From: Octopus sinensis
Lineage: Eukaryota
Direction: 5' to 3'
Assembly: GCF_006345805.1 (NCBI RefSeq)
Contig: NC_043023.1
Coordinates: 12,834,001-12,898,000, forward strand
Length of the DNA: 64,000 nt
How positions within the stretch are numbered: position 1 is the first letter of the stretch; each line of letters starts with the position of its first letter. Under the pieces are notes generated by a model. It did not search any database. It saw only the letters and a list, made by a program, of their open reading frames with translations, and was not told where the DNA came from. Made by a program: the position numbers and the translations under genes. This document shows, in pieces, positions 13,368 through 42,116 of this stretch.

Positions 13368-13415
<48 letters not shown>

Positions 13416-16654: not shown

Positions 16655-16691
<37 letters not shown>

Positions 16692-17599
16692 CAAGTATTA
16701 AGAGAGGGACCACATGTGGTCACTCTAACGCTAGAAATAGATCCGCAAAGGGAATCCACCACTAAAGAATTGTTCTCAAGCATTAATTCAACATGCCAAG
16801 AATGTAAGGGGGCAGGACAAATGAAAAATAACGAAAAAATGGATTAACTCTATACAATTGTTTCATCGTTAATAGATTGTGTAATTTTACTTACAAATCA
16901 TTTTCGAATCATCGGTAGAGTATATCAAAAACATAATTTGCTGAACCAAACGCCAAAATCCATACGAAATTGATGTTATTAATTAATATTCAATTTCTTT
17001 CACCCTTACACACACACATATATGTATATATAATAGTACATATATATGCATAAATACATACGTATACGTACATACATGTTTGTTTATATTCGCGAGTGCC
17101 CGTTCTGCGTATTTTATTTTTTAGTATAAAATAGTTAAAAAAATAGATTAATCGTTCTAATTTTCTCTGGTACTATTTAAAAAGTGTGGTCCCGGTGCGC
17201 GCTCTCGCGCAAGTCAGTCGTGATTAGTCGATCCTACAACGACTACCTAGCAAAGTAAATAAAACACAAAATAAATAATTGTTTTCACACAAAGTAAATA
17301 ATTTTTTGGCGATCCATCGGTATAGGTACCGTGAGTGGCTTTGTTTACATTTCTGAAGATAACAGAAACCCTTTTCTCCCACCACTAACACAAACCTTAA
17401 CCATAACCCCCCACCCCCATATATATAAAAAAAAGACACTTTCTTGAAATGTATCTGGTACTTCCGGTACCTATACCGAAGTTACGCTCATTTTTTTAAA
17501 ACAGAGTAAAGAAAACAAAGTACAAAGTAAGGATCGATTAGTCACGACTAGCTACTGCGGATGCGCGCACCTGGACCTCTCTTCTTAAATAGTACCCTT

Positions 17600-17873
17600 G
17601 TAAGAGTTAGCACTTCCTTCTCTAAGCTTGGATTCGAAATCGAGTCCAAGAATCATCGGTCGTCAAACACCGATGCATGTATAGGCGCGAAATTAAGAAT
17701 CCCTTAGTCCTGACATTGCTCAGGTCGGAGGTCAAAGGGAGATGATCAATCAGTTTTTCTCAGAACAAAGGGATTCTTAATTTCGCGCCTATACATGCAT
17801 TGGTATTTGACGACCGATGATTCTTGGATTCGATTTCGAATCCAAGCTTAGAGAAGGAACTGCTAACTCTTAC
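17600..17873. mobile_element. 274-bp foldback MITE, TSD ACCCTT
   Basis: Same arms and TSD as 6927-7200. Confidence 0.8.
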
Positions 17874-18489
17874 ACCCTTGTATGTTTGTTTATATTCGCG
17901 AGTGCCCGCTCTCCGTATTTTATTTTAAAAAATAGATCAATCTTTCTAATTTTCTCCCTTATGTATTCTGGATATATTTCCCATTTCCTAACTTTTCTCA
18001 CAAGTAAGCGTCATTATCTTGGAGAGGTGCGCGGTACTACTAGCGAACAGTGGTCCAGGTGCGCGCATCCGTGCTAGCTAGTCGTATGTAGTCGATCCTA
18101 CGACTTTTTAACCCTAACCTTAGTTTGTTAACAAAAATAATGTATTTTCTTAGTTTTAAAGATTGTAGGATCGACTACTTACGACTAGCAAGCGCGGATA
18201 CGCGAGTGCACGCACCGGGACCACTGTTCGCTAGTAGTACCTTATTATTATTGGTATTATCATCATCATTACAGCCTTAAAATAAATCGTTGTCAACTTA
18301 CCGTATTCAGATACAAACAACGAGTCAACGATCGTTAATTAAGCACCTTAATTAATTAATTAAGGAAAGTTATATCCCTTTATATGGTTATAGTTCTTCA
18401 ATTTTCTATGACTGGTTCGTTTCGTTCCTGTGTCTTCTTTGTCCCATTCTGTCAACGATTTTACCTTCAAGGTAATATAGAATATATAC

Positions 18490-18650
18490 ACTCACATATT
18501 CTAATCTACGACCGTTTCCAGCGCACGAACTGGACCCCGTCGCAGACACCGAAAGAAAGAAGGCATCTTTGACTTATATCTTCCTGATGTGACGTCAGGC
18601 CGTTGCACTTTCCATCCGTTTCTGACGTCATTTTCTCTCCTGTCCAATCA
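18490..18650 (-). promoter_or_regulatory. Putative promoter/exon 1 of ZF-B
   Basis: TGACGTCA at 18590 and 18623, CCAAT at 18644, donor GTGAGT at 18495; the ETS-like site is altered (ACTTTCCAT). Confidence 0.55.
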
Positions 18651-19899
18651 TTGTCCTTCCTTCACACTTCTCTCTCATCTAAAGAACAATGCTTGGATAC
18701 CTCTTGGGGATCTTTTCGGTTTGACCGGCAGTTTTTTAAAATAATTTCCACGTAACTAAACACTTTTAAACTTCGTATACTGGTAGAATGTGTTTATAAA
18801 ACATTTTTCTCTTGGCTTTATTGAGAAGATTCTATAGTTTGTAAGATATTTGGGATCTTTTCGGTTTGAACGGCAGTTCTTAAAAAGAATGTCCCCGTGT
18901 TAGGGTCAGAAGTGGGGAGAAAAGGCTTTCTGTTATCTTCACAAATGTAAACAAAGTCACGTGTGTACTTATACATCGAAGCATCGCCTTATTATTTACT
19001 TTGTCTAAGAAAAAGAAGGATCTTTTTGGTTTGACCGGCAGTTTTTCTAGCTGCGTCATATGAAATTGTCACCCATAATTATGACCCTAGTATCGATCTA
19101 TTGCATTTCAATCTGTGTTAGGGTAAGGGGTGGGGGAAGGGTATCTTTTTTTCTTCAAAAATGTAAATAAACCCAATCTGTTTCTTAAACGAGGGACATA
19201 TTCATAAGGCACATAATGTTTTTTTTACCTCAATAGACGTCATTGATTGGTAGAAATTGCAGACAAAAAACAACAAATATGTTACAAACCACAGAATTTT
19301 CTCAATAAAGCCAAGGAAAAAGATGCTTCATAAATACATTCTATCTGTATACGAAGTTTAAAATTTTTTTAGTTACCTAGAAATTTAAAAACCTGCCGTT
19401 CATACCGAAAAGATCCCCATTATTCCCAGAGAACAGTTGGCGAACCAGATGGCAGCACCAGGCCCGAATCTGATCTGGTAGAGTTTCTACAGCTGGTTGG
19501 TGTTAGGAAGGGCATCCAGCTGTAGTAACTCTGCCAGATCAGATTGGAGCCTGGTGCTGCCTCCTGGTTCGCCAGTACTCAATCAAATCCTGCAACCCAT
19601 GCTACAATGGAAATCGGACGTTAAACGATGATGATGATGATGATCACAGTGATCTATTTTCTCTCATGTATAATTAAGTTGCTACTTTGAGAGAACCGTC
19701 AGTGGATGGAATGTAGTGTCGTGTGTTCGATATTCGAAGGTTGATTAATTCTTCCAATGACAACGGGGAGGGAAAAGATGGCCCCGCTCCCAACATAATG
19801 CACAATTACGAAAGGAAATAGAGAAGCGCTGGGATTTTTACCTTTCCACCTACAGATTTAAAAGATAATTCTTAAATCTGCTGAAAATTAGGAAGATTC

Positions 19900-20480
19900 A
19901 TCATCATCATCATCATCATTTAGCGTCCGTTTTCCATGCTAGCATGGGTTGGACGTTTCAACTGGGGTCTGTGAAGCTTGAAGGCTTCATCAAGCCCAGT
20001 CAGAGCTGGCAGTGTTTCTACAACTGGATGCCCTTCCTAACGCCAACCACTCCGTGAGTGTAGTGGGTGCTTCTTACGCGCCACCCGCACAGGTGCCAGA
20101 CAGAGCTGGCAAACGGCCACGAACGGATGGTGCTTTTACGTGCCACCGACACGGGGGCCAGACAGAGCTGGAAAACGGCCACGAATGGATGGTGCTTTTA
20201 CGTGCCACCGACACGGGGGCCAGACAGAGCTGGCAAACGGCCACGAACGGATGGTGCTTTTACGTGTCACTGGCACGGGGGCCAGGCGAGGCTGGCAACG
20301 GACACGAACGGATGGTGCTTTTACGTGCCACCGACACGGGGGCCAGGTGAGGCTGGCAACGGACACGAACGGGTGGTGCTTTTACATGCCACCGACACGG
20401 AGGCTAGACAGTGCGGTGCCGAAAACGACCACGATCGGATGGTTCGCTTAACCACAGCTGCAATTCCTACTGATGTTGAT
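19900..20480 (-). mobile_element. (GAT)n-tailed SINE-like repeat with ~61-bp VNTR
   Basis: Paralog of 9687-10380 with fewer units. Confidence 0.8.
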
Positions 20481-22331
20481 CGACCTCAATTTGGTTCTGC
20501 TTTCTGATATATGAATTGATTTGGTTTGATTTTGATTTTGACTGTTCTCACTGGTCTTGCTAAGTCTTCCATTTTTAAAAGTATTTTATACTAACAAATA
20601 AAATATGGAGAACGGGCACTCGCGAATATAAACAGATCATGTCGTGTAGCCAGCTGTAGATGTCTCCTTAGGCTGAATTACATCAACATCTCTCTATATA
20701 TAAATGGCCAAATGTCTGTCTGTGTGTGCGTGTCCTTTATACAAATCCCCAATTTTTCAGTTAGAGGGTTCGCACTTTCTATGGTCATTCAAAACCGTCC
20801 AAGGGTAGTCGTGCACATCTTTACATTTCCCTAGTCACCCCGCAAAGCCATTAAAAAATCAATAGAACAAGGATCTCTGAACAAATAACAATATTTATTT
20901 TTCTGTCTGTACAAACGTTACATCTCTGGACAATCAGTAGCTAGATCGCCTTGGTGCAGAAGCAGCAGAGACAGTTTAATCACGATTGTGAAGGCATACT
21001 TCACAGATTCGCTGAAGTCATGGATCGCCTTCAGAATTCCAGCCACACGGAGCTGGTCAAGTTGCGTCCGGCTTGGTTGGAAGCAGGGGCGAAGAGGGAG
21101 AGAGGACAGCGGTCAAGCGTAGCTGATGCTGATGACTGCACATGCGCATAGGGGGCTTCCGGCAAGCTCTTACTCCTGCACATGCGTGGTGAAAATCCTA
21201 AAATGGCGTCTGGGACCAGGCGTCACTACAAGTCTCCCCCTTCAGTGCAGGGCATGAAAATAGAAAGTTTTTAGTGGCACCAGAAATAAGATGGCTACCG
21301 ATTACCCAGAAGATGTGGCACAAAATATGACAACTCAAAGAAAATGTAATCACAATATACATATAGTTGCAGGAGTGGCTGTTGGGTAAGTAGCTTGCTT
21401 ACCAAACACATGGTCCCAGGTTCAGTCCCACTGCATGGCACCTTGGGTAATTATCTTCTACTATAGCCTCATGCCGACCAAAGCCTTGTGAGTGGATGTG
21501 GCAGACAGAAACTGAAAGAAGCCTGTTGTATAGATGTATATATATATATATGCATGTGTGTCTGTGTTTGTCCCCCTAGCATTGCTTGACAACCGATGCT
21601 GGTGTGTCTATGTCCCCGTCACTTAGCAGTTCGGCAAAAGAGACCGATAGAATAAGTACTGGGCTTAGTAAAGAATAAGTCCCGGGGTCGAGATGCTCTA
21701 TTAAAGGCGGAGCTCCAGCATGGCCGCAGTCAAACGACTGAAACAAGTAAAAGAGAAAGAGAAAGAGAGAATAAGCATGCACAAAAAATTTTATTTTTAC
21801 AAAATGTTTAATAACAAAACATTGGAAATGTCCAGTACACAAAAGAACAGCTGTCTGTCACAGGAAACTGTAGAGAATCCTCCTCATCATCATTGTATAA
21901 CATCTGTTTTCCCTGCTAGCATGGGTTGGACGGTTGACTGGGGTCTGGGAAGCCAGGAGGCTGCACCAGGTTGCAGTCTGATCTGGTAGTGTTTCTACAG
22001 CTGGATGCCCTTCCTAAATGCCAACCACTCTGTGAGTGCAGTGGATGCTTTTACATGCCACCGGCACATGGGCCAGGGGAGACTGGCAATGGCCACGATC
22101 GGATGGTGCGTTTTACGATCCACCAGCACTGGTATCACAGCTACAATTTCCATTGATGTTGATTGATTTCGATTTTGATTCTCACTTGCCTCAACAGGTC
22201 TTCACAGGTAGAGTTTTGTGTCCCAAGAAGGAAAGCTATGCATAAATGGACTGGCCACATCCCAGGTAGAGGCCATGGGTTATGGTCTCACTTGTCCTGC
22301 CGGGTTGTAATAAATTTTGATATTTATACGA

Positions 22332-22796
22332 TTACACCTGTGTATGAATACTCAGATGTGTACTTAAGTGGCGTTTTTGAGAGAATGATTTACCACAGAT
22401 ATCACAATGATTTGGTTTCTCTCCTGTATGAGTACGTTTGTGATGAGTTAAATTGCTATTTTCTGAAAATGATTTACCAAAGATATCACACTGATGTGGC
22501 TTTTCCCCAGTATGAATAAATTTGTGATGAGTTAAAGTGCTATTTTGAGAAAATGATTTACCACAGATATCACAATGACATGGTTTCTCTCCTGTATGAG
22601 TACGTTTGTGATGAGTTAAAGTGCTATTTTCAGAAAATGATTTACCACAGATATCACACTGATATGGTTTTTCTCCAGTATGAACACGTCTGTGCCTTCT
22701 TAGATTATAACTTTGAGAGAATGACTTACCACAGATATCACAGTGATGTGACTTCTCTCTTCTATCAGAGATTTTTGCTTTAGTTGAATTATTCAT
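22332..22796 (-). CDS. ZF-C: 154-aa C2H2 protein, 5 fingers (finger 4 has C>F); upstream promoter unit deleted
   Basis: Open [16 protein letters not shown]...HTQV. The upstream region breaks at about 23518 and no exon 1/promoter copy follows before ZF-D. Confidence 0.75.
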
Positions 22797-23546: not shown

Positions 23547-25678
<2,132 letters not shown>

Positions 25679-26497: not shown

Positions 26498-27646
26498 CTA
26501 TGCATAAGTGGACTGGCTACATCCCAGGTAGAGGCCATGGGTTATGGTCTCACTTGTCCTGCCGGGTTGTAATAAATTTTGATATTGATACGATTTCACC
26601 TGTGTATGAATACTCAGATGTGTGCTTAATTGGCGTTTTTGAGAGAATGACTCACCACAAATATCACAACGATATGGTTTTTCACCTGTATGAATACGTT
26701 TGTGCTCCTTTAATGTATAATGCTGGGAAAATGATTTACCACAGATATCACACTCAAATGGTTTTTCCCCAGTATGAATACGTAGGTGTCTGGTTAAAGA
26801 GCCATTTTCAGAGAATGATTCACCACAGATATCACATTGATATGGTTTTTCCCCAGTATGAATACGTCTGTGACTAGTCAAATTATTATTTCTACTGAAT
26901 GATTTACCACAGATATCACAATGGTATGGCTTCTCTCCTGTATGAATAAGTTTGTGATCAGTTAAATTGTTACTTCTAGAAAATGATTCACCACAGATAT
27001 CACAATGGTATGGCTTTTCCCCAGTATGAATAAATTTGTGATGAGTTAACTTGCTATTTTCAGAAAATGATTTACCACAGATATCACACTGATATGGTTT
27101 CTCTCCTGTATGAGTACGTTTGTGTCTAGGTAAAGCAGCTCTTTTAGAAAATGACTTACCACAGATATCACACTGATATGGTTTCTCTCCTGTATGAGTA
27201 CGTTTGTGTTTAGGTAATTCAGCACTTCGAGAAAATGATTTACCACATATATCACACTGATATGGTTTCTCTCCTGTATGAGTACGTTTGTGTCTAGGTA
27301 AATCAGAGCTTTGAGAAAATGATTTACCACAGATATCACACTGATATGGTTTCTCTCCTGTATGAGTACGTTTGTGTTTAGGTAAGTCAGCACTTCGAGA
27401 AATTGATTTACCACAGATATCACACTGATGCGGCTTGTCCCCAGTATGAATAAATTTGTGATGAGTTAAAGAGCTTTTGTCAGAAAATGATTTACTACAG
27501 ATATCACACTTATAAGGTTTGTCTCCAGTATGAACACGTATGTGCCTACTTAGATTACCACTTTTAGAGAATGAGTTACCACAGATATCACACTGATATG
27601 GCTTCTCTCTTTTATCATTGATTTTTGCTTTAGTTGAATTATTCAT
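26498..27646 (-). CDS. ZF-E: 382-aa C2H2 protein, 12 fingers plus a read-through tail
   Basis: Open ORF; the ancestral stop after HTQV is AAA here (26594-26596), adding [32 protein letters not shown]. Confidence 0.9.
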   Translation of the reverse strand: MNNSTKAKINDKREKPYQCDICGNSFSKSGNLSRHIRVHTGDKPYKCDICSKSFSDKSSLTHHKFIHTGDKPHQCDICGKSISRSADLPKHKRTHTGEKPYQCDICGKSFSQSSDLPRHKRTHTGEKPYQCDICGKSFSRSAELPKHKRTHTGEKPYQCDICGKSFSKRAALPRHKRTHTGEKPYQCDICGKSFSENSKLTHHKFIHTGEKPYHCDICGESFSRSNNLTDHKLIHTGEKPYHCDICGKSFSRNNNLTSHRRIHTGEKPYQCDICGESFSENGSLTRHLRIHTGEKPFECDICGKSFSQHYTLKEHKRIHTGEKPYRCDICGESFSQKRQLSTHLSIHTQVKSYQYQNLLQPGRTSETITHGLYLGCSQSTYA

Positions 27647-28766
27647 AATGAGAGAATAATTTCGTTATACATATCACAATGATAGTATCTGTTTCATTTC
27701 TATGAATGTTTGTGTTCAAATGCATCAGAGAATAATTAAATGTTATGTTACTTTCATTGGTGATCTTGCTTAATATCTAAAACAGAAGATATAAATTGGT
27801 TAACTCTTTTGTAAAGTTACTCAAACTTAACCTGTAGGTTCATCATCATCTCTACATTCCAGATGGCAAAAAAAATGTTGCTCTTAATTCCATCATCCAG
27901 AAGAAATATTTCCCCATTGTTCGGCGAAGATTTTATTTATATAAAGAAGCTGATGTTTTTATGAATGTGTCTTATGAATATATGGTCTTCCTGTAATTGA
28001 TGAAAGTCAATAAAAATATCAGACACACATCCCGAATGAAGAAATTTCTTTTAAATCAACATGGTATGATATTCTGAAATAGGAAAAAATTCATTTCTAT
28101 GAATATATTTGTGTTGCTATCTTCAGAGAATAATTTAATGGTATGCTTCTTTCATCTGTGATCTTGCTTAATATCTAAATCAAGAGGTGACAATCGTCTA
28201 ACGCTTTGTAAAGTTATCCAAGCCTTATTAACCTGTAAAACAATCATCTCCTCTATATTCCAGACAGCAAAGACTTCAAATTGTTGCTGTTAATTCCATC
28301 GTCCAGAAGAAATAATTTGCTGTTGTTTTTCACAGATTTCCTTTATAAGATGAGTTTGATGTATTGATGAATGCTCCTTATAAATATATCATCTTCCTTT
28401 GGTTGATGGGAGCTGATAAAATATCAGAGGCACATCTGAATGAAGTAATTTCTTTCATATCAACAGGATGTTATATTCTGAAATAGAAAAAAAAAGAAGC
28501 AGTGAGATAAAGAGAATCATTAAACGACATAGTAATTCAACATTGCAAATCTTACAACATCAACACTGTCATCCATTTAATGTCTATGTTTGCAGGGGTC
28601 AGAATCCATTGAGGCATTGAAACTTTTACAACATTCTGTATAGAGATTTCTCTATTGTTCTGCTGTGGGAAAAATTTTGGTGAAGGGTTAAATAAAATTT
28701 TGGCTATGGTGGATCCAATCTACTTCATGCGTGCAAGATTCACTACAAATATATTTGTATACACAA

Positions 28767-28798
<32 letters not shown>

Positions 28799-29023
28799 TT
28801 AATCAATATAGGGTGGCAAGGAAAATTTTGTAGAATTTTATTGCCACCAGCGGCCCAGCGGGAAAAAATTAAATAGTCATAGACCATTTTTAAGTTCAAC
28901 ATTAACAATTAAGGAACGGCCATAATAGGCCATTCACCCACTAGAAATAACAGCCAAAGCTTCTACCGCAAATAAAGATTAATTCCGTAAACAGGAGAAA
29001 ATTAAAAAAACATTTACCCTGTA

Positions 29024-29130
29024 ATTTCTTGTACGGTATACCGTTTCATCCGCTGTTTAATGGTAAACTAACCTGATTAAATTAAATCAAGCCAATCCTC
29101 CATAAGCCCTCGGATTCTTCAGCAAGAAAT
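29024..29130 (-). ncRNA. Type I hammerhead ribozyme, copy 1
   Basis: Sense: AUUUCUUG-CUGAAGA-AUCCG-(58 nt)-CGGAU-GAAA-CGG-UAUA-CCG-UA/CAAGAAAU. Stem I 8 bp, stem II 5 bp, stem III 4 bp, intact core. Predicted cut between 29032 and 29031. Confidence 0.85.
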
Positions 29131-29514
29131 AGCTCAAGTCGGGACAGATATATACACGAGGCATACCCAATCTTGCCAAGTCAATATCTGACCTAAAATT
29201 TTCAAATCGTCGCACTCGCGCCAAATTTATCGGCAGCAAATAGATATCAGCCGTCGATTCCATTACGGAATTAACCAAAAAATTCATAATTAATCAATAT
29301 AGGGTGGCAAGGAAAATTTTGTAGAATTTTATTGCCACCAGCGGCCCAGCGGGAAAAAATTAAATAGTCATAGACCATTTTTAAGTTCAACATTAACAAT
29401 TAAGGAACGGCCATAATAGGCCATTCACCCACTAGAAATAACAGCCAAAGCTTCTACCGCAAATAAAGATTAATTCCGTAAATAGGAGAAAATTAAAAAA
29501 ACATTTACCCTGTA

Positions 29515-29621
29515 ATTTCTTGTACGGTATACCGTTTCATCCGCTGTTTAATGGTAAACTAACCTGATTAAATTAAATCAAGCCAATCCTCCATAAGCCC
29601 TCGGATTCTTCAGCAAGAAAT
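29515..29621 (-). ncRNA. Type I hammerhead ribozyme, copy 2
   Basis: Identical motif at +491. Confidence 0.85.
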
Positions 29622-30005
29622 AGCTCAAGTCGGGACAGATATATACACGAGGCATACCCAATCTTGCCAAGTCAATATCTGACCTAAAATTTTCAAATCG
29701 TCGCACTCGCGCCAAATTTATCGGCAGCAAATAGATATCAGCCGTCGATTCCATTACGGAATTAACCAAAAAATTCATAATTAATCAATATAGGGTGGCA
29801 AGGAAAATTTTGTAGAATTTTATTGCCACCAGCGGCCCAGCGGGAAAAAATTAAATAGTCATAGACCATTTTTAAGTTCAACATTAACAATTAAGGAACG
29901 GCCATAATAGGCCATTCACCCACTAGAAATAACAGCCAAAGCTTCTACCGCAAATAAAGATTAATTCCGTAAACAGGAGAAAATTAAAAAAACATTTACC
30001 CTGTA

Positions 30006-30112
30006 ATTTCTTGTACGGTATACCGTTTCATCCGCTGTTTAATGGTAAACTAACCTGATTAAATTAAATCAAGCCAATCCTCCATAAGCCCTCGGATTCT
30101 TCAGCAAGAAAT
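30006..30112 (-). ncRNA. Type I hammerhead ribozyme, copy 3
   Basis: Identical motif at +982. Confidence 0.85.
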
Positions 30113-30677
30113 AGCTCAAGTCGGGACAGATATATACACGAGGCATACCCAATCTTGCCAAGTCAATATCTGACCTAAAATTTTCAAATCGTCGCACTCG
30201 CGCCAAATTTATCGGCAGCAAATAGATATCAGCCGTCGATTCCATTACGGAATTAACCAAAAAATTCATAATTAATCAATATAGGGTGGCAAGGAAAATT
30301 TTGTAGAATTTTATTGCCACCAGCGGCCCAGCGGGAAAAAATTAAATAGTCATAGACCATTTTTAAGTTCAACATTAACAATTAAGGAACGGCCATAATA
30401 GGCCATTCACCCACTAGAAATAACAGCCAAAGCTTCTACCGCAAATAAAGATTAATTCCGTAAACAGGAGAAAATTAAAAAAAAAAACATTTACCCTGTA
30501 ATTTCTTGTACGGTATACCGTTTCATCCGCTGTTTAATGGTAAACTAACCTGATTAAATTAAATCAAGCCAATCCTCCATAAGCCCTCGCGAGTGCGACG
30601 ATTTGAAAATTTTAGGTCAGATATTGACTTGGCAAGATTGGGTATGCCTCGTGTATATATCTGTCCCGACTTGAGCT

Positions 30678-30784
30678 ATTTCTTGCTGAAGAATCCGAGG
30701 GCTTATGGAGGATTGGCTTGATTTAATTTAATCAGGTTAGTTTACCATTAAACAGCGGATGAAACGGTATACCGTACAAGAAAT
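30678..30784 (+). ncRNA. Type I hammerhead ribozyme in the inverted segment
   Basis: Stem I 30678-30685/30777-30784, CUGAAGA 30686-30692, stem II 30693-30697/30756-30760, GAAA 30761-30764, GUA 30774-30776. Confidence 0.85.
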
Positions 30785-30903
30785 TACAGGGTAAATGTTT
30801 TTTTTAATTTTCTCCTGTTTACGGAATTAATCTTTATTTGCGGTAGAAGCTTTGGCTGTTATTTCTAGTGGGTGAATGGCCTATTATGGCCGTTCCTTAA
30901 TTG

Positions 30904-30949
<46 letters not shown>

Positions 30950-31317
30950 CAAGTATTAAGAGAGGGACCACATGTGGTCACTCTAACGCTAGAAATAGAT
31001 CCGCAAAGGGAATCCACCACTAAAGAATTGTTCTCAAGCATTAATTCAACACGCCAAGAATGTAAGCGGGCAGGACAAATGAAAAATAACGAAAAAATGG
31101 ATTAACTCTATACAATTGTTTCATCGTTAATAGATTGTGTAATTTTACTTACAAATCATTTTCGAATCATCGGTAGAGTATATCAAAAACATAATTTGCT
31201 GAACCAAAGGGAGATTTCTCTATTGTTCTGCTGTGGGAAAAATTTTGGTGAAGGGTTAATTAAAATCTTGGCAAGGATGGATCCAATCTAATAAGATTCA
31301 CTACAATATATTTGTAT

Positions 31318-31366
<49 letters not shown>

Positions 31367-33691
31367 AGTATTAAGAGAGGGACCACATGTGGTCACTCTA
31401 ACGTTAGAAATAGATCCACAAAGGGAATCCACCACTAAAGAATTGTTCTCAAGCATTAATTCAACACGCCAAGAATGTAAGAGGGCAGGACAAATGAAAA
31501 ATAATTTTTTGGCGATCCTTCGGTATAGGTACCGTGAGTGGCTTTGTTTACATTTCTGAAGATAACAGAAACCCTTTTCTCCCACCACTAACACAAACCT
31601 TAACCATAACCCCCCCATATATAAGAAAAAAAGACACTTTCTTGAAATGTATCTGGTACTTCCGGTACCTATACCGAAGTTACGCTCATTTTTTCAAACA
31701 AAGAATATAATTTTTTTAAAACAAAGTAAATAAAACAAAAATATAAAGTAAGGATCGACTAGTCACGACTAGCTACTGCGGATGCGCGCACCTGGACCTC
31801 TCTTCTTAAATAGTACCCTTGTAAGAGTTACCACGTCCTTCTCTAAGCTTGGATTCGAAATCGAGTCCAAGAATCATCGGTCGTCAAATACCAATGCATG
31901 TATAGGCGCGAAATTAAGAATCCCTTTGTCCTGACATTGCTCAGGTCGGAGGTCAAAGGGAGATGATCAATCAGTTTTTGTCAGCACAAAGGGAAAGAGA
32001 TTTCTCTATTGTTCTGCTGTGGGAAAAATTTTGGTGAAGGGTTAATTAAAATCTTGGCAAGGATGGATCCAATCTACTTTACGATTCACTACAAATATAT
32101 TTGTATACACACACACACATATATATATATATACAAGTATTAAGCGAGGGACCACATGTGGTCACTCTAACGCTAGAAATAGATCCACAAAGGGAATCCA
32201 CCACTAAAGAATTGTTCTCAAGCATTAATTCAACACGCCAAGAATGTAAGCGGGCAGGACAAATGAAAAATAACGAAAAAATGGATTAACTCTATACAAT
32301 TGTTTCATCATTAATAGATTGTGTAATTTTACTTACAAATCATTTTCGAATCATCGGTAGAGTATATCAAAAACATAATTTGCTGAACCAAACGCCAAAA
32401 TCCATACGAAATTGATGTTATTAATTAATATTCAATTTCTTTCACCCTTACACACACACATATATGTATACATAATTATACATATATATGCATAAATACA
32501 TACGTATACGTACATACATGTTTGTTTATATTCGCGAGTGCCCGTTCTGCGTATTTTATTTTTTAGTATAAAATAGTTAAAAAAATAGATTAATCGTTCT
32601 AATTTTCTCCGGTACTATTTAAAAAGTGTGGTCCCGGTGCGCGCACTCGCGCTAGTTAGTCGTGATTAGTCGATCCTACAACGACTACCTACCAAAGTAA
32701 TTAAAACACAAAATAAATAATTTTTTTACACAAAGTAAATAATTTTTTGGTGATCCTTCGGTATAAGTACCGTGAGTGGCTTTGTTTACATTTCTGAAGA
32801 TAACAGAAACCCTTTTCTCCCACCCCTAACAGAAACCTTAACCATAACCCCCCATATATATATATATATAAAAAAGACACTTTCTTGAAATGTATCTGGT
32901 ACTTCCGGTACCTATACCGAAGTTACGCTCATTTTTTCAAAGAAAATAATTTTTTTAAAACAAAGTAAATTAAACAAAAATACAAAGTAAGAATCGACTA
33001 GTCACGACTAGCTAGCGCGCCCACCGGGACCTCTCTTCTTAAATAGTACCCTTATATGTTTGTTTATATTCGCGAGTGCCCGTTCTCCGTATTTTATTTT
33101 TTAGTATAAAATATTTAAAAAATAGATTAATCTTTCTAATTTCCTCCATACTTTATGTATTCTGGATATATTTCCCATTTCCTAACTTTTTCTCACAAGT
33201 AAGCGTCATTATCTTGGAGAGGTGCGCGGTACTACTAGCGAAGAGTGGTCCGGTGCGCGCACTCACGCATCCGTGCTAGCTAGTCGTATGTAGTCGATAC
33301 TACGACTTTTAAACCCTAACCTTAGTTTGTTTACAAAAATAATGTATTTACTTAGTTTAAAAAATTGTAGGATCGACTACTTACGACTAGCAAGCTCGGA
33401 TACCCGAGTGCGCGCACCGGGACCACTGTTCGCTAGTACTACCTTATCATTATTGGTATCATCATCATCATTACAGCCTTAAAATAAATCTTTATCAACT
33501 TACCGTATTCAGATACAAACAACGAGTCAGCGATCGTTAATTAAGCACCTTAATTAATTAATTAAGGAAATTTATATCCCTTTGTATGGTTATAGTTCTT
33601 CAATTTTCTATGACTGGTTCGTTTCGTTCCGGTGTCTTCTTTGTCCCATTCTGTCAACGATTTTACCTTCAAGATAATATAGAATATATAC

Positions 33692-33909: not shown

Positions 33910-34380
33910 GGATCTTTTCGGTTTGACCGGCAGTTTTTAAAAATAATTTCCACGTAACTAAACACTTTTAAACTTCGTATACTGGTAGAATGTGTTTATA
34001 AAACATCTTTTTCTCCTGGCTTTATTGAGAAAATTCTATCGTTTGTAAGATATTTGGGATCTTTTCGGTTTGACCGGCAGTTTTTAAAAATAATTTCCAC
34101 GTAACTAAACACTTTTAAACTTCGTATACTGGTAGAATGTGTTTATAAAACATCTTTTTCTCCTGGCTTTATTGAGAAAATTCTATCGTTTGTAAGATAT
34201 TTCGGATCTTTTCGGTTTGACCGGCAGTTTTTAAAAATAATTTCCACGTAACTAAACACTTTTAAACTTCGTATACTGGTAGAATGTGTCTATTAAACGT
34301 TTTTCTCTTGGCTTTATTGAGAAAATTCTATTGTTTGTAAGATATTTCGGATCTTGTATTGGTTTGAACGGCAGTTTTTT
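33910..34380. repeat. ~147-bp tandem expansion of a MITE left arm, about 3 copies
   Basis: GGATC starts at 33910, 34057, 34204 and 34349. Confidence 0.8.
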
Positions 34381-36448
34381 TTAATAATTTCCACGTGTTA
34401 GGGTTAGAAGTGGGGAGAAATGGCTTTCTGTTACCTACAAAGTCACGTGTGTACTTATATATCGAAGCATCGCCTTATTATTTACTTTGTGTAAAAAGAA
34501 AAGGATCTTTTCGGTTTGACCGGCAGTTTTTTGTAGCGGTGTCATATGTAATTGTCACCCATAATTATGACCCTAGTATCGATCTATTGCATTTCAATTT
34601 GTGTTAGGATTAGGGGTGGGGGAAGGGTATCTTTTTTTCTTCAAAAATGTAAATAAACCCAATCCGTTTCTTAAACGAGGGGCGTATTCATAAGGCACAT
34701 AATGCTTTTTTTACCTCAATAGACGTCATTGATTGGTTGAAAGATGCTTTATAAATACATTCTATCTGTATACGAAGTTAAAATTTTTTAGCTACCAAGA
34801 AATTTAAAAACCTGCCGTTCAAACCGAAAAGATCCCCATTATTTCCAGAGAAAAGTTGTCGAACCAGATGGCTGCACCAAGCTCCAATCTGATCTGGTAG
34901 AGTTTCTACAGCTGGTTGGTGTTAGGAAGGGCATCCAGCTGTAGAAACTCGGCCAGATCAGATTGGAGCCTGGTGCTGCCTCCTGGTTCGCCAGTCCTCA
35001 ATCAAATCGTGCAACCCATGCTACAATGGAAATCGGACGTTAAACGATGATGATGATGATGATCACAGTGATCTATTTTCTCTCATGTATAATTAAGTTG
35101 CTACTTTGAGAGAACCGTCAGTGGATGGAATGTAGTGTCTTGTGTTCGATATTCGAAGGTTGATTAATTCTTCCAATGACAACGGGGAGGGAAAAGATGG
35201 CACCGCTCCCAACATAATGCACATTACGAAAGGAAATAGAGAAGCGCTGGGATTTTTACCTTTTGACCTACAGATTTAAAAGATAATTCTTAAATCTGCA
35301 CAAAATTAGGAAGATTGATCCATTTTTTAAAAGTATTTTATACTAACAAATAAAATATGGAGAACGGGCACTCGTGAATATAAACAGATCATGTCGTGTA
35401 GCCAGCTGTAGATGTCTCCTTAGGCTGAATTACATCAACATCTCTCTATATATAAATGGCCAAATGTCTGTCTGTGTGTGCGTGTCCTTTATAAAATCCA
35501 CAATTTTTCAGTTAGAGGGCTCGCACTTTCTATGGTCATTCAAAACCGTCCAAGGGTGGTCGTGCACATCTATACATTTCCCTAGTCACCCCGCAACGCC
35601 ATTAAATATATATATAAATGGCAAAATGTCTCTGTGTGTGTCTTTTATACAAATCCACAATTTTTCAGTTAGAGGGCTCGCACTTTCTATGGTCATTTAA
35701 AACCGTCCAAGGGTCGTCGTGCACATCTTCACATTTCCCCAGTCACCCCACAAAGCCATTAAAAAATCAAGAGAACAAGGATCTCTGAACAAATAACAAT
35801 ATTTATTTTTCTGTCTGTACAAGCGTTACATCTCTGGACAATCAGTAGCTAGGTCGCCTTGGTGCGGAAGCAGCAGAGACAGTTTAATCACGATTGTGAA
35901 GGCATACTTCATAGATTCACTGAAGTCATGGATCGCCTTCAGAATTCCAGCCACACGGAGCTGGTCAAGTTGCGTCCGGCTTGGTTGGAAGCAGGGGCGA
36001 AGAGGGCGAGAGGACAGCGGTCAAGCCTAGCTGATGCTGATGACTGCACATGTGCATAAGGGGCTTCCGGCAGGCTCTTACCCCTGTGCATGCGTGGATG
36101 AAAATCCTAAAATGGTGTCTGGGACCAGGCGTCACTACAAGGCTCCCACTTGAGTGCGGAGCATGAAAATAGAAAGATTATAGTGACACCAGAAATAAGA
36201 TGGCTACCGATTACCCAGAAGATGTGGCACAAAATATGACAATTCAAAAGAAAATGTAATCACAGTATACATATAGGCGCAGGAGTGGCTGTGTGGTAAG
36301 TAGCTTGCTTACCAACCACATGGTTCCAGGTTCAGTCCCACTGCATAGCACCTTGGGTCAGTATCTTCTACTATAGCCTCAGGCCAACCAAAGCCTTGTG
36401 AGTGGATTTGGTAGACGGAAACTGAAAGAAGCCTGTCGTATATTTGTA

Positions 36449-38932: not shown

Positions 38933-40318
38933 TCACAATGTATGAATACGTTTATGTTTAGGCAGGGTACTACTGTGAGAGAATGATTTACCACAGATAT
39001 CACACTGATATGGTTTCTCTCCTGTATGAGTACGTAGGTGTCCAGTTAAAGTGCCAATTTCAGAGAATGACTCACCACAGATATCACAGTGATATGGTTT
39101 TTTCCCAGTATGAATACGTTTACGTTTAGGCAAGTCACTACTGTGAGAGAATGATTTACCACAGATATCGCAATGGTATGGCTTCTCTCCTGTATGAGTA
39201 CGTTTGTGTCTAGGTAAGTCAGCACTTCGAGAAAATGATTTACCACAGATATCACACTGATATGGTTTTTCTCCAGTATGAACACGTCTGTGCCTTCTTA
39301 GATCACAACTTTGAGAGAATGAATTACCACAGATATCACAGTGATATGGTTTTTCCCCAGTATGAATACGTTTATGTTTAATTAAGTCACTGCTGTAAGA
39401 GAATGATTTACCACAGATATTACAATGGTATGGCTTCTCTCCTGTATGAATATGTTTGTGACTGATTAAATTGCTATTACGAGAGAATGATTCACCACAG
39501 ATATCACATTGATATGGTTTTTCCCCAGTATGAATACGTATATGACTAGTCAAATGACTATTTGCAGTGAATGATTTACCACAGATGTCACAATGGTATG
39601 GCTTCTCTCCTGTATGAATACGTTTGTGATCAGTTAAACTGTTACTTATAGAAAATGATTTACCACAGATATCACAATGATGGGGCTTTTCTCCTGTATG
39701 TGTACGTTTGTGTTTATTTAAGTCACTACTGGTAGAGAATGATTTACCACAGATATCACACTGATATGGTTTCTCTCCTGTATGGGTACGTTTGTGTTTA
39801 GGCAAGTCACTACTGTGAGAAAATGATTTACCACAGATATCACACTGATATGGTTTCTCTCCTGTATGAGTACGTTTGTGATGAGTTAAAGTGCTATTTT
39901 GAGAAAATGATTTACCACAGATATCACACTGATGCGGCCTTTCCCCATTATGAATAAATTTGTGATGAGTTAAATTGCTATTTTCAAAAAATGATTTACC
40001 ACAGATATCACACTGATGTGGCTTTTCCCCAGTATGAATAAATTTGTGATGAGTTAAAGTGCTATTTTGAGAAAATGATTTACCACAGATATCACACTGA
40101 TGCGGCTTTTCCCCAGTATGAATAAATTTGTGATGAGTTAAATTGCTATTGTCAGAAAATGATTTACCACAGATATCACACTGATATGGTTTTTCTCCAG
40201 TATGAACACGTCTGTGCCTTCTTAGATTATAACTTTGAGAGAATGACTTACCACAGATATCACAGTGATGTGGCTTCTCTCTTTTATCATTGATTTTTGC
40301 TTTAGTTGAATCATTCAT
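38933..40318 (-). CDS. ZF-F: 461-aa C2H2 protein, 16 fingers (finger 14 has H>R)
   Basis: Open [16 protein letters not shown]...HTL. A ~17-nt linker deletion at 38940/38941 frameshifts off a 17th finger (38863-38940). Confidence 0.9.
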
Positions 40319-40825: not shown

Positions 40826-42116
40826 CAAGTATTAAGAGAGGGACCACATGTGGTCACTCTAACGCTAGAAATAGATCCGCAAAGGGAATCCACCACTAAA
40901 GAATTGTTCTGAAGCGTTAATTCAACACGCCAAGAATGTAAGCGGGCAGGACAAATGAAAAATAACGAAAAAATGGATTAACTCTATACAATTGTTTCAT
41001 CGTTAATAGATTGTGTAATTTTACTTACAAATCATTTTCGAATCATCGGTAGAGTATATCAAAAACATAATTTGCTGAACCAAACGCCAAAATCCATACG
41101 AATTTGATGTTATTAATTAATATTCAATTTCTTTCGCCCTTACACACACACACATATATGTATACATAATAATACATATATATGCATAAATACATACGTA
41201 TACGTACATACATGTTTGTTTATTTTCGCGAGTGCCCGTACTGCGTATTTTATTTTTTAGTATAAAATAGTTTAAAAAATAGATTGATCGTTCTAATTTT
41301 CTCTGGTAGTATTTAAAAAGAGTGGTCCCGGTGAGCGCACTCGCGCTAGTTAGTCGTGACTAGTCGATCCTACAACGACTACCTAGCAAAGTAAATAAAA
41401 CACAAAATCGGAAAATAAAGATCGACTAGTCCCGACTAGCTAGCGCGCCCACCGGGACCTCTCTTCTTAAATAGTACCCTTATAAGTTTGCTTATATTCG
41501 CGAGTGCCCGTTCTACGTATTTTATTTTTTAGTATAAAATATTTAAAAAATAGATTAATCTTTCTAATTTTCTCCATACTTTATGTATTCTGGATATATT
41601 TCCCATTTCCTAACTTTTCTCACAAGTAAGCGTCATTATCTTGGAGAGGTGCGCGGTACTACTAGCGAACACTGGTCTCGGTGCGCGCACTCGCACATCC
41701 GTGATAGCTAGTCGTATGTTGTCGATCCTACTTTTTAACCCTAACCTTAGTTTGTTTACAAAAATAATGTATTTACTTAGTTTTAAAAGTTGTAGGATCG
41801 ACTACTTACGACTAGCAAGCGCGGATACGCGAGTGCGCGCACCGGGACCACTATTCGCTAGTAGTACCTTATCATTAATGGTATTATCATCATCATTACA
41901 GCCTTAAAATAAATCTTTGTCAACTTACCGTATTCAGATACAAACAACGAGTCAGTGATCGTTAATTAAGCACCTTAATTAATTAATTAAGGAAAGTTAT
42001 ATCCCTTTATATGGTTATAGTTCTTCAATTTTCTATGACTGGTTCGTTTCGTTCCGGTGTCTTCTTTGTCCCATTCTGTCAACGATTTTACCTTCGAGGT
42101 AATATAGAATATATAC

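What the first reader, a model, noticed from the sequence alone, without database searches (positions are those of the whole stretch)
28799..30908. Hammerhead-ribozyme tandem array: candidate cephalopod retrozyme / non-autonomous Penelope-like element
Seen: 3.6 copies of a 491-bp monomer with almost no differences (one C/T at 29483 and one A-run length noticed). Each full copy has a complete type I hammerhead on the minus strand: stem I AUUUCUUG/CAAGAAAU, core CUGAAGA and GAAA, stem II AUCCG/CGGAU, stem III ACGG-UAUA-CCGU and a GUA cleavage triplet. No RT or other recognisable protein is encoded. Established: type I hammerheads occur in Penelope-like element pseudo-LTRs and in metazoan retrozymes, which are tandem arrays of a few hundred nt processed to circular RNAs. 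Inference: this is a young retrozyme-like insertion. Its ends do not coincide with the cut site and intact ribozymes lie internally, which suits reverse transcription of a circular monomer. I do not recall such a family being described from octopods, but I cannot search for it.
Basis: partly seen in the sequence, partly recalled or inferred. Interest (0 to 1): 0.95.

Follow-up and report, generated by a model that had tools for sequence, protein, structure and literature searches.

The report
Hammerhead-ribozyme tandem retroelement (retrozyme) insertion
A 2.1-kb block of near-identical 491-bp repeats, each carrying a complete self-cleaving hammerhead ribozyme motif, was recently inserted into a (TA)n microsatellite of a zinc-finger gene cluster; it belongs to an already described class of ribozyme-bearing mobile elements (animal "retrozymes"), and its two head-to-head arms resemble the insertions made by Penelope-like retrotransposons.

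Summary
TRF finds 3.6 copies of a 491-bp unit at 28795-30589 with 99% matches. There are four complete type I hammerheads, three on the minus strand and one on the plus strand. All have the core (CUGAAGA, GAAA, GUA), an 8-bp helix I, a 5-bp helix II with a 58-nt extension, and a 4-bp palindromic helix III. No motif this good appeared in 1000 shuffles of the window. Rfam Hammerhead_1 aligns over its full length but scores 21.4 bits, below the 34-bit gathering score, apparently because of the helix II insertion. Seven uninterrupted paralogous sites in the window show that the block is a discrete insertion into a (CA)n(TA)n tract. The arms meet 5'-to-5' at a 2-nt microhomology. Their 3' ends face outward and stop at the same position of an internally repeated motif. 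This fits priming of reverse transcription from both cut target strands, as published for a Penelope-like element enzyme. No protein is encoded. Not testable here: cleavage, circular RNA, other genomic copies, covariation and host species. Verdict: a real non-LTR retrozyme-type element, a new member of a known kind, of moderate interest.

The parts
28779..28798 (.). Left remnant of the target (TA)n microsatellite (20 bp), preceded by (CA)n
   Evidence: Paralogous empty sites carry a single (TA)n run of 11-33 bp at this position.
28799..30589 (-). Left (long) arm of 1791 nt. The ribozyme-sense strand is the minus strand. Read 5'->3' on minus: a truncated unit (sense positions s411-491), three full 491-nt units, then s1-233. 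Its 3' end abuts the left (TA)n.
   Evidence: TRF, BLAST of the unit against the window, coordinate mapping.
29024..29130 (-). Complete type I hammerhead no. 1; predicted cut between 29032 and 29031
   Evidence: Descriptor scan; Rfam RF00163 21.4 bits at 29026-29128.
29515..29621 (-). Complete type I hammerhead no. 2; predicted cut between 29523 and 29522
30006..30112 (-). Complete type I hammerhead no. 3; predicted cut between 30014 and 30013
29032..29522 (-). Excisable 491-nt monomer A (between cut sites 2 and 1). It carries the T variant at 29483.
   Evidence: Derived. As a circle it folds at -142.1 kcal/mol, z = -5.1 against shuffles; the antisense strand reaches only -100.7.
29523..30013 (-). 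Excisable 491-nt monomer B (between cut sites 3 and 2)
   Evidence: Derived.
30501..30589 (-). Truncated hammerhead of the 5'-most direct unit. Helix III, GAAA and most of helix II are present. The helix I 5' strand, CUGAAGA and the first 3 nt of helix II are missing, so it cannot cleave in cis.
   Evidence: Sequence; not returned by the descriptor scan.
30588..30589 (.). Head-to-head junction of the two arms: a 2-nt CG shared by both arms, centre of the palindrome CTCGCGAG
   Evidence: The BLAST hits overlap by 2 nt; sequence. It is not a perfect foldback: in the inverted pair nearest the junction the arms lie 106 nt apart (pair I7).
30588..30908 (+). Right (short) inverted arm of 321 nt. The ribozyme-sense strand is the plus strand. 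It spans s303-491 plus s1-131, and its 3' end abuts the right (TA)n.
30678..30784 (+). Complete type I hammerhead no. 4; predicted cut between 30776 and 30777
   Evidence: Descriptor scan; Rfam RF00163 21.4 bits, E 0.0067, at 30680-30782; the minimum-energy fold is the hammerhead, -35.8 kcal/mol, z = -4.3.
30907..30945 (.). Right remnant of the target (TA)n microsatellite (39 bp)
29283..29303 (-). Internal copy of motif A (CCTATATTGATTAATTATGAA, s220-240). The left arm's 3' end (28799) falls after TTAA of this motif.
29386..29405 (-). Internal copy of motif B (CCTTAATTGTTAATGTTGAA, s118-137). The right arm's 3' end (30906-30908) falls after TTAA(T) of this motif.
   Evidence: 16 of 20 aligned positions identical plus one gap. 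An equal or better score occurs in 0.3% of random position pairs in the unit and 2.9% of AT-rich pairs.
31211..31504 (+). Nearest uninterrupted paralogue of the insertion site (empty site). Six more lie at about 6.0, 16.7, 32.1, 40.8, 54.0 and 61.5 kb.
   Evidence: Alignment A1; BLAST of the flanks; junction listing.

Best explanation
This is a very recent insertion of a non-coding, non-autonomous retroelement of the animal 'non-LTR retrozyme' type. Its 491-nt unit contains one type I hammerhead ribozyme.

Proposed life cycle (inferred from the published class). An array is transcribed on the ribozyme-sense strand. Each hammerhead cuts after GUA, and this locus could release two full 491-nt monomers. 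[quoted passage not shown] The RNA is then copied into DNA by the reverse transcriptase/endonuclease of an autonomous element, most likely a Penelope-like element (PLE).

Proposed integration at this locus (inferred from the anatomy). Both strands of a (TA)n tract were cut. Each 3'-OH primed cDNA synthesis on retrozyme RNA at the same short motif, UUG(A)UUAA^U. One cDNA ran for 3.65 units, either around a circle or along a multimer. The other ran for 0.65 unit. The two cDNA 3' ends annealed through a CG dinucleotide, and each served as template for the other's second strand. This gives the observed head-to-head arms with their 3' ends outward.

Shown here: the motif, the array, the insertion, the arm polarity, the microhomology and the absence of coding capacity. 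Inferred: transcription, cleavage, circularisation, the identity of the enzyme and the order of events.
For: Hammerhead. All conserved core nucleotides and three helices are present. Four identical copies are found, against 0 of 1000 shuffles at this quality. Rfam RF00163 aligns over positions 1-45 of 45 with no non-standard pair marked. The isolated 119-nt region folds into the hammerhead as its minimum-energy structure, z = -4.3.

Sense-strand RNA. The 491-nt circle folds at -142.1 kcal/mol against -111.5 +/- 6.0 for shuffles (z = -5.1). The antisense strand reaches only -100.7.

Insertion. Seven paralogous sites are contiguous across a single (TA)n of 11-33 bp. The filled site has 20 bp on one side and 39 bp on the other.

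Youth. There is one substitution and two homopolymer length changes in about 2.1 kb. The host flanks differ from their paralogues by 0.4-16%. No other tandem array in the window exceeds 95% matches.

Non-coding. The longest ORF is 68 aa, with no Pfam hit and no relative in the protein database.

PLE-style architecture. Published PLE insertions are 5'-truncated partial tandems, often with an inverted 5'-truncated copy at the 5' end, and show a (TA)n bias in Naiads (PMC8557442). A purified PLE protein cuts and extends both target strands, prefers AT-rich DNA and starts reverse transcription at defined internal RNA sites (PMC11167929). Here the inverted arm lies 5' of the sense array, and both arms end at equivalent positions of a repeated motif.

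Class definition. Tandem units with a type I hammerhead, low GC, no LTR/PBS/PPT, with PLEs suspected as the mobilising partner (PMC7229834; preprint 10.64898/2026.07.22.740005).
Against: No experimental or comparative support is available here. There are no other copies in the window. Exact-pattern scans of metagenome and viral contigs found nothing. Covariation, copy number and expression are therefore untested.

The ribozyme is below Rfam's gathering score (21.4 against 34 bits). The 10.1-11.1 pair is A-U where the Rfam consensus has G-C. The usual short loop 2, and hence the canonical loop 1/loop 2 contacts, are absent. In the full circle, helix I is predicted to cost +3.9 kcal/mol relative to the minimum-energy structure, with pair probability of about 0.5%.

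No PLE reverse transcriptase or GIY-YIG ORF lies within about 8 kb. The rest of the window was checked only through ORFs of at least 110 aa.

The PLE clade with the documented (TA)n bias (Naiad) lacks canonical hammerheads. The two arm ends are 103 nt apart, whereas the PLE 'tail' is 30-40 bp. The shared end motif is only moderately significant once AT-richness is allowed for (p about 0.03).
Confidence: 0.72

Rival explanations
1. The element is the same, but the template was a linear, uncleaved multimeric transcript of a source array (internal initiation and read-through of several units), not a circular monomer.
For: For the anole PLE studied in vitro, unprocessed RNA was the dominant template. 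Its hammerhead needed the protein to cleave, and ribozyme mutants did not change insertion (PMC11167929). The long arm's cDNA begins and ends at internal positions, as expected for internal initiation and 5' truncation. The single C/T difference and the variable A-run could reflect heterogeneity between units of a source array.
Against: A stable 4-bp helix III and an 8-bp helix I predict a ribozyme that is active as a monomer (invertebrate retrozyme hammerheads self-cleave efficiently, PMC7229834). A 1.8-kb transcript would therefore have to escape three consecutive cuts. Circles were the most abundant form in the invertebrates that were tested.
Confidence: 0.3
2. Only one unit, or a fragment such as a solo PLE pseudo-LTR, was inserted. 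The tandem copies arose afterwards at the DNA level by unequal crossing-over, replication slippage, or rolling-circle amplification and reintegration of extrachromosomal circular DNA, i.e. satellite birth.
For: The 2026 preprint proposes local amplification of PLE-derived sequence as the origin of retrozyme arrays. Near-identity of the units is equally expected from very recent DNA-level duplication.
Against: The arms have the specific polarity expected of twin priming: ribozyme-sense 3' ends outward, 5' truncations inward, joined by 2-nt microhomology. Both ends stop at the same motif position. Length changes in the U7/A7 run occur in 2 of 5 traversals, which suits reverse-transcriptase slippage. 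None of the seven paralogous sites holds a single-unit intermediate.
Confidence: 0.12
3. The hammerhead is a decayed or non-functional motif, and the array is an ordinary satellite or minisatellite with no RNA-based life cycle.
For: It is below Rfam's gathering score. The 10.1-11.1 pair is A-U, there is a 58-nt insertion in helix II, and no recognisable loop-loop contacts. PLE-associated hammerheads can have very low activity in vitro (PMC4209133).
Against: Every core position and all three helices are intact in all four complete copies. The chance expectation is about 0.001 or less per 64 kb. The helix II insertion itself folds as a continuous 14-bp plus 4-bp extension of helix II rather than disrupting it. 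The strong strand asymmetry of predicted folding favours the ribozyme strand.
Confidence: 0.08
4. Assembly artefact: a collapsed or expanded repeat, or a chimeric foldback read.
For: PLE-type tandem/inverted structures are known to cause assembly problems. The homopolymer length differences could be sequencing errors.
Against: The inverted junction is not a perfect palindrome, because the arms are offset. Both outer flanks are unique host sequence and colinear with seven paralogues. The units carry a distinguishing substitution.
Confidence: 0.04

Closest known systems
Metazoan non-LTR retrozymes (Cervera & de la Pena 2020, PMC7229834), e.g. the Mytilus galloprovincialis 350-390-bp repeats, coral and axolotl families
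   Same: Tandem head-to-tail units of a few hundred bp, one type I hammerhead per unit, no ORF, no LTR, GC below 50% (36.9% here). The sense RNA is predicted to be highly self-paired. As in the mussel hammerheads, the conserved loop 1/loop 2 nucleotides are missing.
   Different: The 491-nt unit is above the usual 170-400 nt, though within the stated 150 to >1000 nt range. Helix II carries a 58-nt extension in place of a short loop. Helix III is longer (4 bp). The 10.1-11.1 pair is A-U. Expression and circles are not shown. I found no retrozyme paper in the searched library that reports cephalopod hammerheads, and the retrozyme papers I searched do not describe an inverted arm or a microsatellite target.
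Penelope-like elements (PLEs) and their pseudo-LTR hammerheads (PMC4209133, PMC8557442, PMC11167929)
   Same: Partial tandem organisation, 5' truncation, an inverted 5'-truncated copy at the 5' end, an AT-rich or (TA)n target, ends defined by internal initiation of reverse transcription, and a sense-strand type I hammerhead.
   Different: There is no RT/GIY-YIG ORF, so this is not an autonomous PLE. Metazoan PLE hammerheads are mostly 'minimal' (helix III of 0-2 bp, acting as dimers), whereas this one has a stable helix III. The distance between the two end sites is 103 nt, not a 30-40-bp tail. Sequence similarity to any PLE pseudo-LTR could not be tested.
L1 'twin priming' inversions (from my own knowledge: Ostertag & Kazazian 2001)
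   Same: Two cDNAs primed from the two target strands on the element's RNA, joined 5'-to-5' by microhomology, which gives an inverted 5' segment next to a direct 3' segment.
   Different: Different enzyme family and no poly(A). Here both primers are (TA)n ends, and the template is a repeating or circular unit.
Classical hammerhead satellites (newt satellite 2; from my own knowledge also Schistosoma Sm-alpha and the cave-cricket pDo500 satellite of about 500 bp)
   Same: Tandem DNA repeats transcribed into self-cleaving monomers. pDo500 has a similar unit length.
   Different: Those are high-copy families with demonstrated cleavage. Only one locus is seen here and activity is untested. These families are now subsumed under retrozymes.

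Membership tests
Hammerhead ribozyme, type I (Rfam RF00163 / structural definition) | Conserved core C3 U4 G5 A6 N7 G8 A9, G12 A13 A14, an A15.1-U16.1 pair, and H17 (not G) at the cut site | tested here: met
   CUGAAGA ... GAAA ... U-A|C is present in all four complete copies.
Hammerhead ribozyme, type I (Rfam RF00163 / structural definition) | Three helices around the core, with helix I open (type I) | tested here: met
   Helix I 8 bp (open), helix II 5 bp plus a 58-nt closed arm, helix III 4 bp plus a UAUA loop. This is the minimum-energy structure of the 119-nt region.
Hammerhead ribozyme, type I (Rfam RF00163 / structural definition) | Score at or above the curated Rfam gathering threshold (34 bits) | tested here: not met
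   21.4 bits, E 0.0067-0.07, full-length alignment. I attribute the deficit to the long helix II insertion and the A-U pair at 10.1-11.1; this attribution is inferred, not measured.
Hammerhead ribozyme, type I (Rfam RF00163 / structural definition) | Helices supported by covariation among homologues | not testable with these tools
   All copies are identical in the ribozyme. No relatives were retrievable.
Hammerhead ribozyme, type I (Rfam RF00163 / structural definition) | Site-specific self-cleavage | not testable with these tools
   Needs an in vitro transcription and cleavage assay.
Animal non-LTR retrozyme | Tandem repeats of about 150-1000 bp | tested here: met
   491 bp in 3.6 direct copies plus a 0.65 inverted copy.
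Animal non-LTR retrozyme | A type I hammerhead in every full repeat unit (the preprint's criterion for an 'active' retrozyme) | tested here: met
   Three of three full units, plus the inverted arm.
Animal non-LTR retrozyme | No protein-coding capacity, no LTRs, low GC | tested here: met
   ORFs of at most 68 aa without Pfam hits. Simple tandem structure. GC 36.9%. PBS and PPT motifs were not specifically searched for.
Animal non-LTR retrozyme | Evidence of mobility (a discrete insertion and dispersed copies) | tested here: inconclusive
   A discrete insertion is shown by seven empty paralogous sites. Dispersed copies elsewhere in the genome could not be searched.
Animal non-LTR retrozyme | Expressed as self-cleaved linear and circular monomer RNA | not testable with these tools
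   No transcriptome access. The prediction is 491-nt RNAs spanning 29032-29522 and 29523-30013 on the minus strand.
Animal non-LTR retrozyme | Co-occurrence with autonomous PLEs in the same genome | not testable with these tools
   Host species not identified. The literature reports PLEs in cephalopods, including Octopus vulgaris.
Autonomous Penelope-like element | An ORF with a telomerase-like RT and a GIY-YIG endonuclease | tested here: not met
   No ORF over 68 aa in the element, and none over 150 aa in 27.6-38.9 kb. It is therefore not filed as a PLE, only as a likely PLE-dependent element.
Autonomous Penelope-like element | Insertion architecture: partial tandem, inverted 5'-truncated copy upstream, AT-rich or microsatellite target | tested here: met
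   compared with PMC8557442 and PMC11167929.

The most novel reading that the evidence does not exclude
This locus may be a clean snapshot of retrozyme integration. Both strands of a (TA)n target appear to have primed reverse transcription of a 491-nt hammerhead RNA at one specific, internally duplicated initiation motif (UUG(A)UUAA^U), and the two cDNAs were joined by microhomology. If genome-wide copies show the same two termini and the same head-to-head arms, this would be direct structural evidence that animal retrozymes are integrated by the dual-strand, internally initiating mechanism so far shown only in vitro for one vertebrate PLE. It would also define a cis-acting initiation signal, and it could mean that a hammerhead-bearing parasite exploits a (TA)n-targeting PLE lineage that has no hammerhead of its own. 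The 58-nt helix II arm would then be a new natural hammerhead variant lacking the canonical loop 1/loop 2 contacts.
Probability: 0.3. Interest if true: 0.65.

Novelty: new member of a known kind. Interest (0 to 1): 0.45.

Why it matters
Animal retrozymes and their circular RNAs are an established but thinly sampled class. How they are reverse-transcribed and integrated is still hypothetical. This locus adds a probably molluscan (possibly cephalopod) family with an unusually large unit and an extended helix II. More usefully, it offers one very young insertion with empty paralogous sites, so the target, both termini and the internal junction can be read at base resolution. That anatomy matches what PLE enzymes do in vitro and what PLE insertions look like. 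It is therefore independent support, from a single locus, for the view that retrozymes are PLE-dependent. It also gives concrete, testable predictions: two cut sites, a 491-nt circle, and a candidate initiation motif. It is not a new kind of system.

Tried and rejected
1. Rfam at gathering threshold over the whole window gave no hit. The sub-threshold mir-297, mir-1277 and similar hits are only the (CA)n(TA)n tracts.

2. I tried to retrieve related copies through spurious ORFs of the unit. The exact look-up of the 66-aa ORF found nothing on record, and the homologue search found no candidate.

3. Exact DNA pattern scans for the ribozyme gave 0 matches in metagenome contigs (two patterns) and in viral contigs. 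I did not scan the bacterial/archaeal genome collection or the phage, plasmid and E. coli collections, because they are irrelevant to an animal repeat.

4. Host identification failed. The zinc-finger protein search was saturated by generic C2H2 hits of at most 62% identity (a poor choice of query). Exact look-up of six window ORFs found none in the collection. The Pif1-like fragment gave only a 62% cuttlefish hit as the best named relative.

I replaced it with a stop-to-stop ORF listing and a Pfam scan of selected ORFs.

6. My first hammerhead descriptor script had a bug (helix III extended into its loop) and returned nothing. It was corrected.

7. Considered and rejected:
- A viroid-like or deltavirus-like integrated replicon. 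There is no ribozyme of the opposite polarity at E <= 10 and no ORF.
- A plant-type LTR retrozyme. There are no LTRs, and the ribozyme is type I, not type III.
- A simple foldback artefact. The arms are offset.
Full report
**1. What is in the sequence**

Tandem Repeats Finder reports one array at 28795-30589: period 491, 3.6 copies, 99% matches, no indels. No other tandem array in the window exceeds 95% matches.

BLAST of the first unit against the window gives three full units: 28795-29285, 29286-29776 and 29777-30267. It also gives a partial fourth unit (30268-30589, unit positions 1-318) and a minus-strand match at 30588-30908. That last match is the reverse complement of unit positions 107-426 at 99.7% identity (inverted repeats I1-I8).

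The differences among copies are few:
- C/T at 29483.
- The first bases at the edge of the TA tract.
- The length of one A-run: 7, 7, 7 and 11 nt in the direct units and 8 nt in the inverted arm.

There is no other copy or fragment of the unit in the 64 kb.

**2. The hammerhead**

Read on the ribozyme-sense strand, each complete copy is:

AUUUCUUG-CUGAAGA-AUCCG[58 nt]CGGAU-GAAA-CGG-UAUA-CCG-U-A|CAAGAAAU

A descriptor scan I wrote finds four such motifs and nothing else in the window, even at relaxed thresholds:
- 29024-29130, 29515-29621 and 30006-30112 on the minus strand.
- 30678-30784 on the plus strand.

In 1000 dinucleotide-preserving shuffles of the window, the expected number per shuffle was:
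- 0.035 with stems of at least 3/3/2 bp.
- 0.001 with stems of at least 5/4/3 bp.
- 0 at the observed 8/5/4 bp.

Rfam finds nothing at gathering threshold. In E-value mode, Hammerhead_1 (RF00163) aligns over its full length (positions 1-45 of 45) with no non-standard pair marked, at 21.4 bits against a gathering score of 34. Three copies were listed in the 2.7-kb search, and the plus-strand copy was found in a separate 261-nt search. The alignment shows that the core matches. It also shows a long insertion in loop II and an A-U pair at 10.1-11.1 where the consensus has G-C. I take these two features to be the cause of the score deficit.

The 119-nt region folds into the three-way junction as its minimum-energy and centroid structure: -35.8 kcal/mol, z = -4.3, with 0 of 200 shuffles as stable. 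The 58-nt insertion forms a coaxial extension of helix II, with a 4-bp and a 14-bp stem separated by internal loops.

Helix III plus its loop, ACGGUAUACCGU, is a perfect palindrome. Small palindromic helix III loops are typical of metazoan type I hammerheads (PMC4209133). At 4 bp, however, this helix should be stable in a monomer.

The fourth direct unit is cut off at 30589 inside its ribozyme. It lacks the helix I 5' strand, CUGAAGA and the start of helix II.

**3. The RNA it would make**

The predicted cut sites are 29032|29031, 29523|29522 and 30014|30013 on the minus strand, and 30776|30777 on the plus strand. A minus-strand transcript across the long arm would release two complete 491-nt monomers (30013 to 29523 and 29522 to 29032).

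As a circle, this RNA (36.9% GC, 37% U) has a predicted minimum free energy of -142.1 kcal/mol, against -111.5 +/- 6.0 for shuffles (z = -5.1). The complementary strand reaches only -100.7. That asymmetry points to the ribozyme strand as the structured, functional one.

In the full circle, helices II and III belong to the minimum-energy structure. Helix I competes with local hairpins: forcing it costs +3.9 kcal/mol, and its pair probability is about 0.5%. The circle is thus predicted to be only partly protected from re-cleavage. Tertiary contacts are not modelled.

No ribozyme of the opposite polarity, and no other RNA family, is detected at E <= 10.

**4. It is an insertion, and a young one**

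The host sequence on the left (28600-28779) and right (30950-31200) of the block recurs seven more times in the window. Each time the two flanks are contiguous and separated only by a (TA)n run of 11-33 bp, at about 6.0, 16.7, 31.3, 32.1, 40.8, 54.0 and 61.5 kb. The common context is ...TTTGTATACACA(CA)n(TA)nCAAGTATTAAGAGAGGG...

At the filled site, 20 bp of (TA)n lie to the left and 39 bp to the right of a 2108-bp insert (28799-30906). The total of 59 bp is about three times the 19 bp of the paralogues at 16.7 and 54.0 kb. This is compatible with a target-site duplication within the microsatellite, but microsatellite instability makes it unprovable.

The flanks differ from their paralogues by 0.4-16%. 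The about 2.1 kb of element sequence contains one substitution. The insertion therefore postdates the duplications that built the gene cluster.

The site lies 1.13-1.15 kb upstream of the start codon of a minus-strand C2H2 zinc-finger ORF in four of the units. At the filled site, the ribozyme-sense strand of the long arm is the same strand as that gene.

**5. Anatomy of the insertion and what it implies**

I number the sense strand from the nucleotide after the cut (s1).

- **Long arm** (sense on minus, 30589 to 28799): s411-491, then three full units, then s1-233. That is 1791 nt.
- **Short arm** (sense on plus, 30588 to 30908): s303-491, then s1-131. That is 321 nt.

Both arms have their sense 3' ends facing the flanking (TA)n. 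Their 5'-truncated ends meet in the middle, sharing a CG dinucleotide (30588-30589) at the centre of CTCGCGAG. The junction is not a perfect foldback, because the arms are offset; this argues against a chimeric-read artefact.

The two outer ends fall at the same position (+/- 1 nt) of a roughly 21-nt motif that occurs twice in the unit:
- CCUAUAUUGAUUAA^UUAUGAA
- CCUUAAUUG-UUAA^UGUUGAA

Sixteen of 20 aligned positions are identical, with one gap. An equal or better match occurs in 0.3% of random position pairs within the unit, and in 2.9% of pairs when both are AT-rich.

My manual reading of the junction sequences is that, downstream of each end, the RNA could pair with a (TA)n primer end over about 4 nt, counting G-T wobble pairs.

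The simplest model is twin priming:
1. Both strands of the (TA)n tract are cut.
2. Each 3'-OH primes cDNA synthesis on the element's RNA at that motif.
3. One cDNA runs for 3.65 units and the other for 0.65 unit.
4. The two cDNA 3' ends anneal through CG, and each completes the other's second strand.

The extra As in the homopolymer occur in the last-synthesised unit of the long arm and in the short arm. This would suit reverse-transcriptase slippage on U7, though sequencing error is an alternative.

**6. Comparison with what is known**

*Retrozymes.* Cervera and de la Pena (PMC7229834) define animal non-LTR retrozymes as follows:
- Tandem repeats carrying type I hammerheads.
- No LTR, PBS or PPT, and low GC.
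- Circularised by a protein ligase.
- Proposed to be reverse-transcribed from the circle into tandem cDNA, with PLEs as the leading candidate for the enzyme.

Mussels carry about 5000 such ribozymes in 350-390-bp repeats, and those lack the canonical loop-loop nucleotides. A 2026 preprint relates vertebrate retrozymes phylogenetically to PLE pseudo-LTRs and favours local amplification for array growth.

*Penelope-like elements.* Craig et al. (PMC8557442) describe PLE insertions as 5'-truncated partial tandems, often with an inverted 5'-truncated copy at the 5' end. Naiads show a (TA)n insertion bias; they occur in cephalopods but lack canonical hammerheads.

Frangieh et al. (PMC11167929) show several properties of a purified PLE protein:
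- It cuts and extends both target strands.
- It prefers AT-rich DNA.
- It initiates at defined internal RNA sites that are not homologous to the target.
- It mainly uses unprocessed RNA.

A 2026 repeat annotation of Octopus vulgaris lists PLE families and does not mention ribozymes.

*Where this locus stands.* It meets every structural criterion of a non-LTR retrozyme that I could test, and it has the insertion architecture of a PLE. It has no RT/EN ORF, so it is not itself a PLE. I found no paper in the library that describes hammerhead retrozymes in cephalopods. The retrozyme papers I searched do not mention inverted arms or microsatellite targets.

**7. What could not be settled**

- **Other copies, covariation and a PLE partner:** The ORF-based route and the DNA-pattern route both returned nothing.
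- **Template topology:** a circle and a multimeric linear RNA both fit. A monomer-competent ribozyme argues for the circle; the in vitro PLE data argue for unprocessed RNA.
- **Host:** the window is a cluster of C2H2 zinc-finger ORFs with a 14-kb segmental duplication at 98.5-98.9% identity. The only taxonomic hint is a Helitron-like Pif1 fragment whose best named relative is from the cuttlefish Acanthosepion pharaonis at 62% identity. A cephalopod origin is plausible but unproven.

**8. Verdict**

This is a new family of an already described kind of element. It has a somewhat unusual ribozyme (a long helix II arm and an A-U pair at 10.1-11.1) and an informative, very young twin-arm insertion into (TA)n.

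Scores:
- Interest: 0.45.
- The most novel reading still open, that this locus documents the dual-strand, motif-specific integration mechanism of retrozymes: probability 0.3, interest 0.65 if true.

Noticed in passing
window 3947-4654, 14402-15541, 22332-22796, 24132-25478, 26498-27646, 38933-40318, 51686-52825, 59939-60367 (all minus strand): A cluster of multi-finger C2H2 zinc-finger ORFs. Five of the eight start with the same N-terminus, MN(N/D)STKAKI(N/S)D(K/R)REK. The 84-bp TRF arrays are the finger repeats. A generic protein search gave only hits of 62% identity or less, and the exact ORFs are not in the protein collection.
   Followed up: partly
window 8485-22657 vs 45707-59942: A segmental duplication of about 14 kb at 98.5-98.9% identity (offset about 37.2 kb), plus older unit-level duplications of the zinc-finger gene unit at 80-94% identity.
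   Followed up: partly
window 30950-31200 and its paralogues at 6040-6290, 16692-16942, 32134-32384, 40826-41076, 53977-54227, 61502-61751: The 251 bp to the right of the insertion site are 98.4-99.6% identical among seven paralogues. The left flank is only 84-96% identical. This suggests a conserved exon or promoter about 1.1 kb upstream of each zinc-finger ORF, or gene conversion. Unexplained.
   Followed up: no
window 12092-12457 (+) and duplicate 49310-49675 (+): A 121-aa ORF with a Pif1 2B domain (PF21530, E 1.6e-15), probably a Helitron-type helicase remnant. The best named relative is a protein of the cuttlefish Acanthosepion pharaonis at 62% identity. This is the only taxonomic hint obtained.
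   Followed up: partly
window 1383-1751 (-): A 122-aa ORF that I read by eye as the C-terminal part of a LINE-type reverse transcriptase. It has only a weak, sub-threshold DUF6451 Pfam hit. It does not look PLE-like.
   Followed up: partly
window 9846-10340, 20066-20443, 47067-47561, 57352-57729: GC-rich 61/62-bp minisatellites (82-88% matches) that stay open in several reading frames on both strands and so produce many spurious ORFs of 110-190 aa.
   Followed up: no
window 8348-8681, 33910-34396, 42340-42634: Short tandem arrays (2-3 copies, 87-95% matches) of a 145-147-bp unit, recurring at three places. Probably another repeat family or SINE-like element.
   Followed up: no
window 28721-28788 and 30893-30964: Sub-threshold Rfam 'mir-297', 'mir-1277' and 'mir-568' hits. 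They are low-complexity matches to the (CA)n(TA)n tracts, not microRNA genes.
   Followed up: yes
window 27646-30589 (minus strand): The long arm's ribozyme-sense strand is the same strand as the zinc-finger ORF 26498-27646, which starts 1.15 kb downstream of the arm. If the gene's 5' exon or promoter lies beyond 30.9 kb, the hammerheads would sit in its pre-mRNA and could cleave it. Read-through from the array into the gene is also conceivable.
   Followed up: no
window 30945-30952 vs the paralogous empty sites: At the filled site the right flank reads (TA)nCATACAAG, whereas all the empty sites read (TA)nCAAG. This is a 4-bp ATAC duplication next to the microsatellite, of unknown relation to the insertion.
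   Followed up: no
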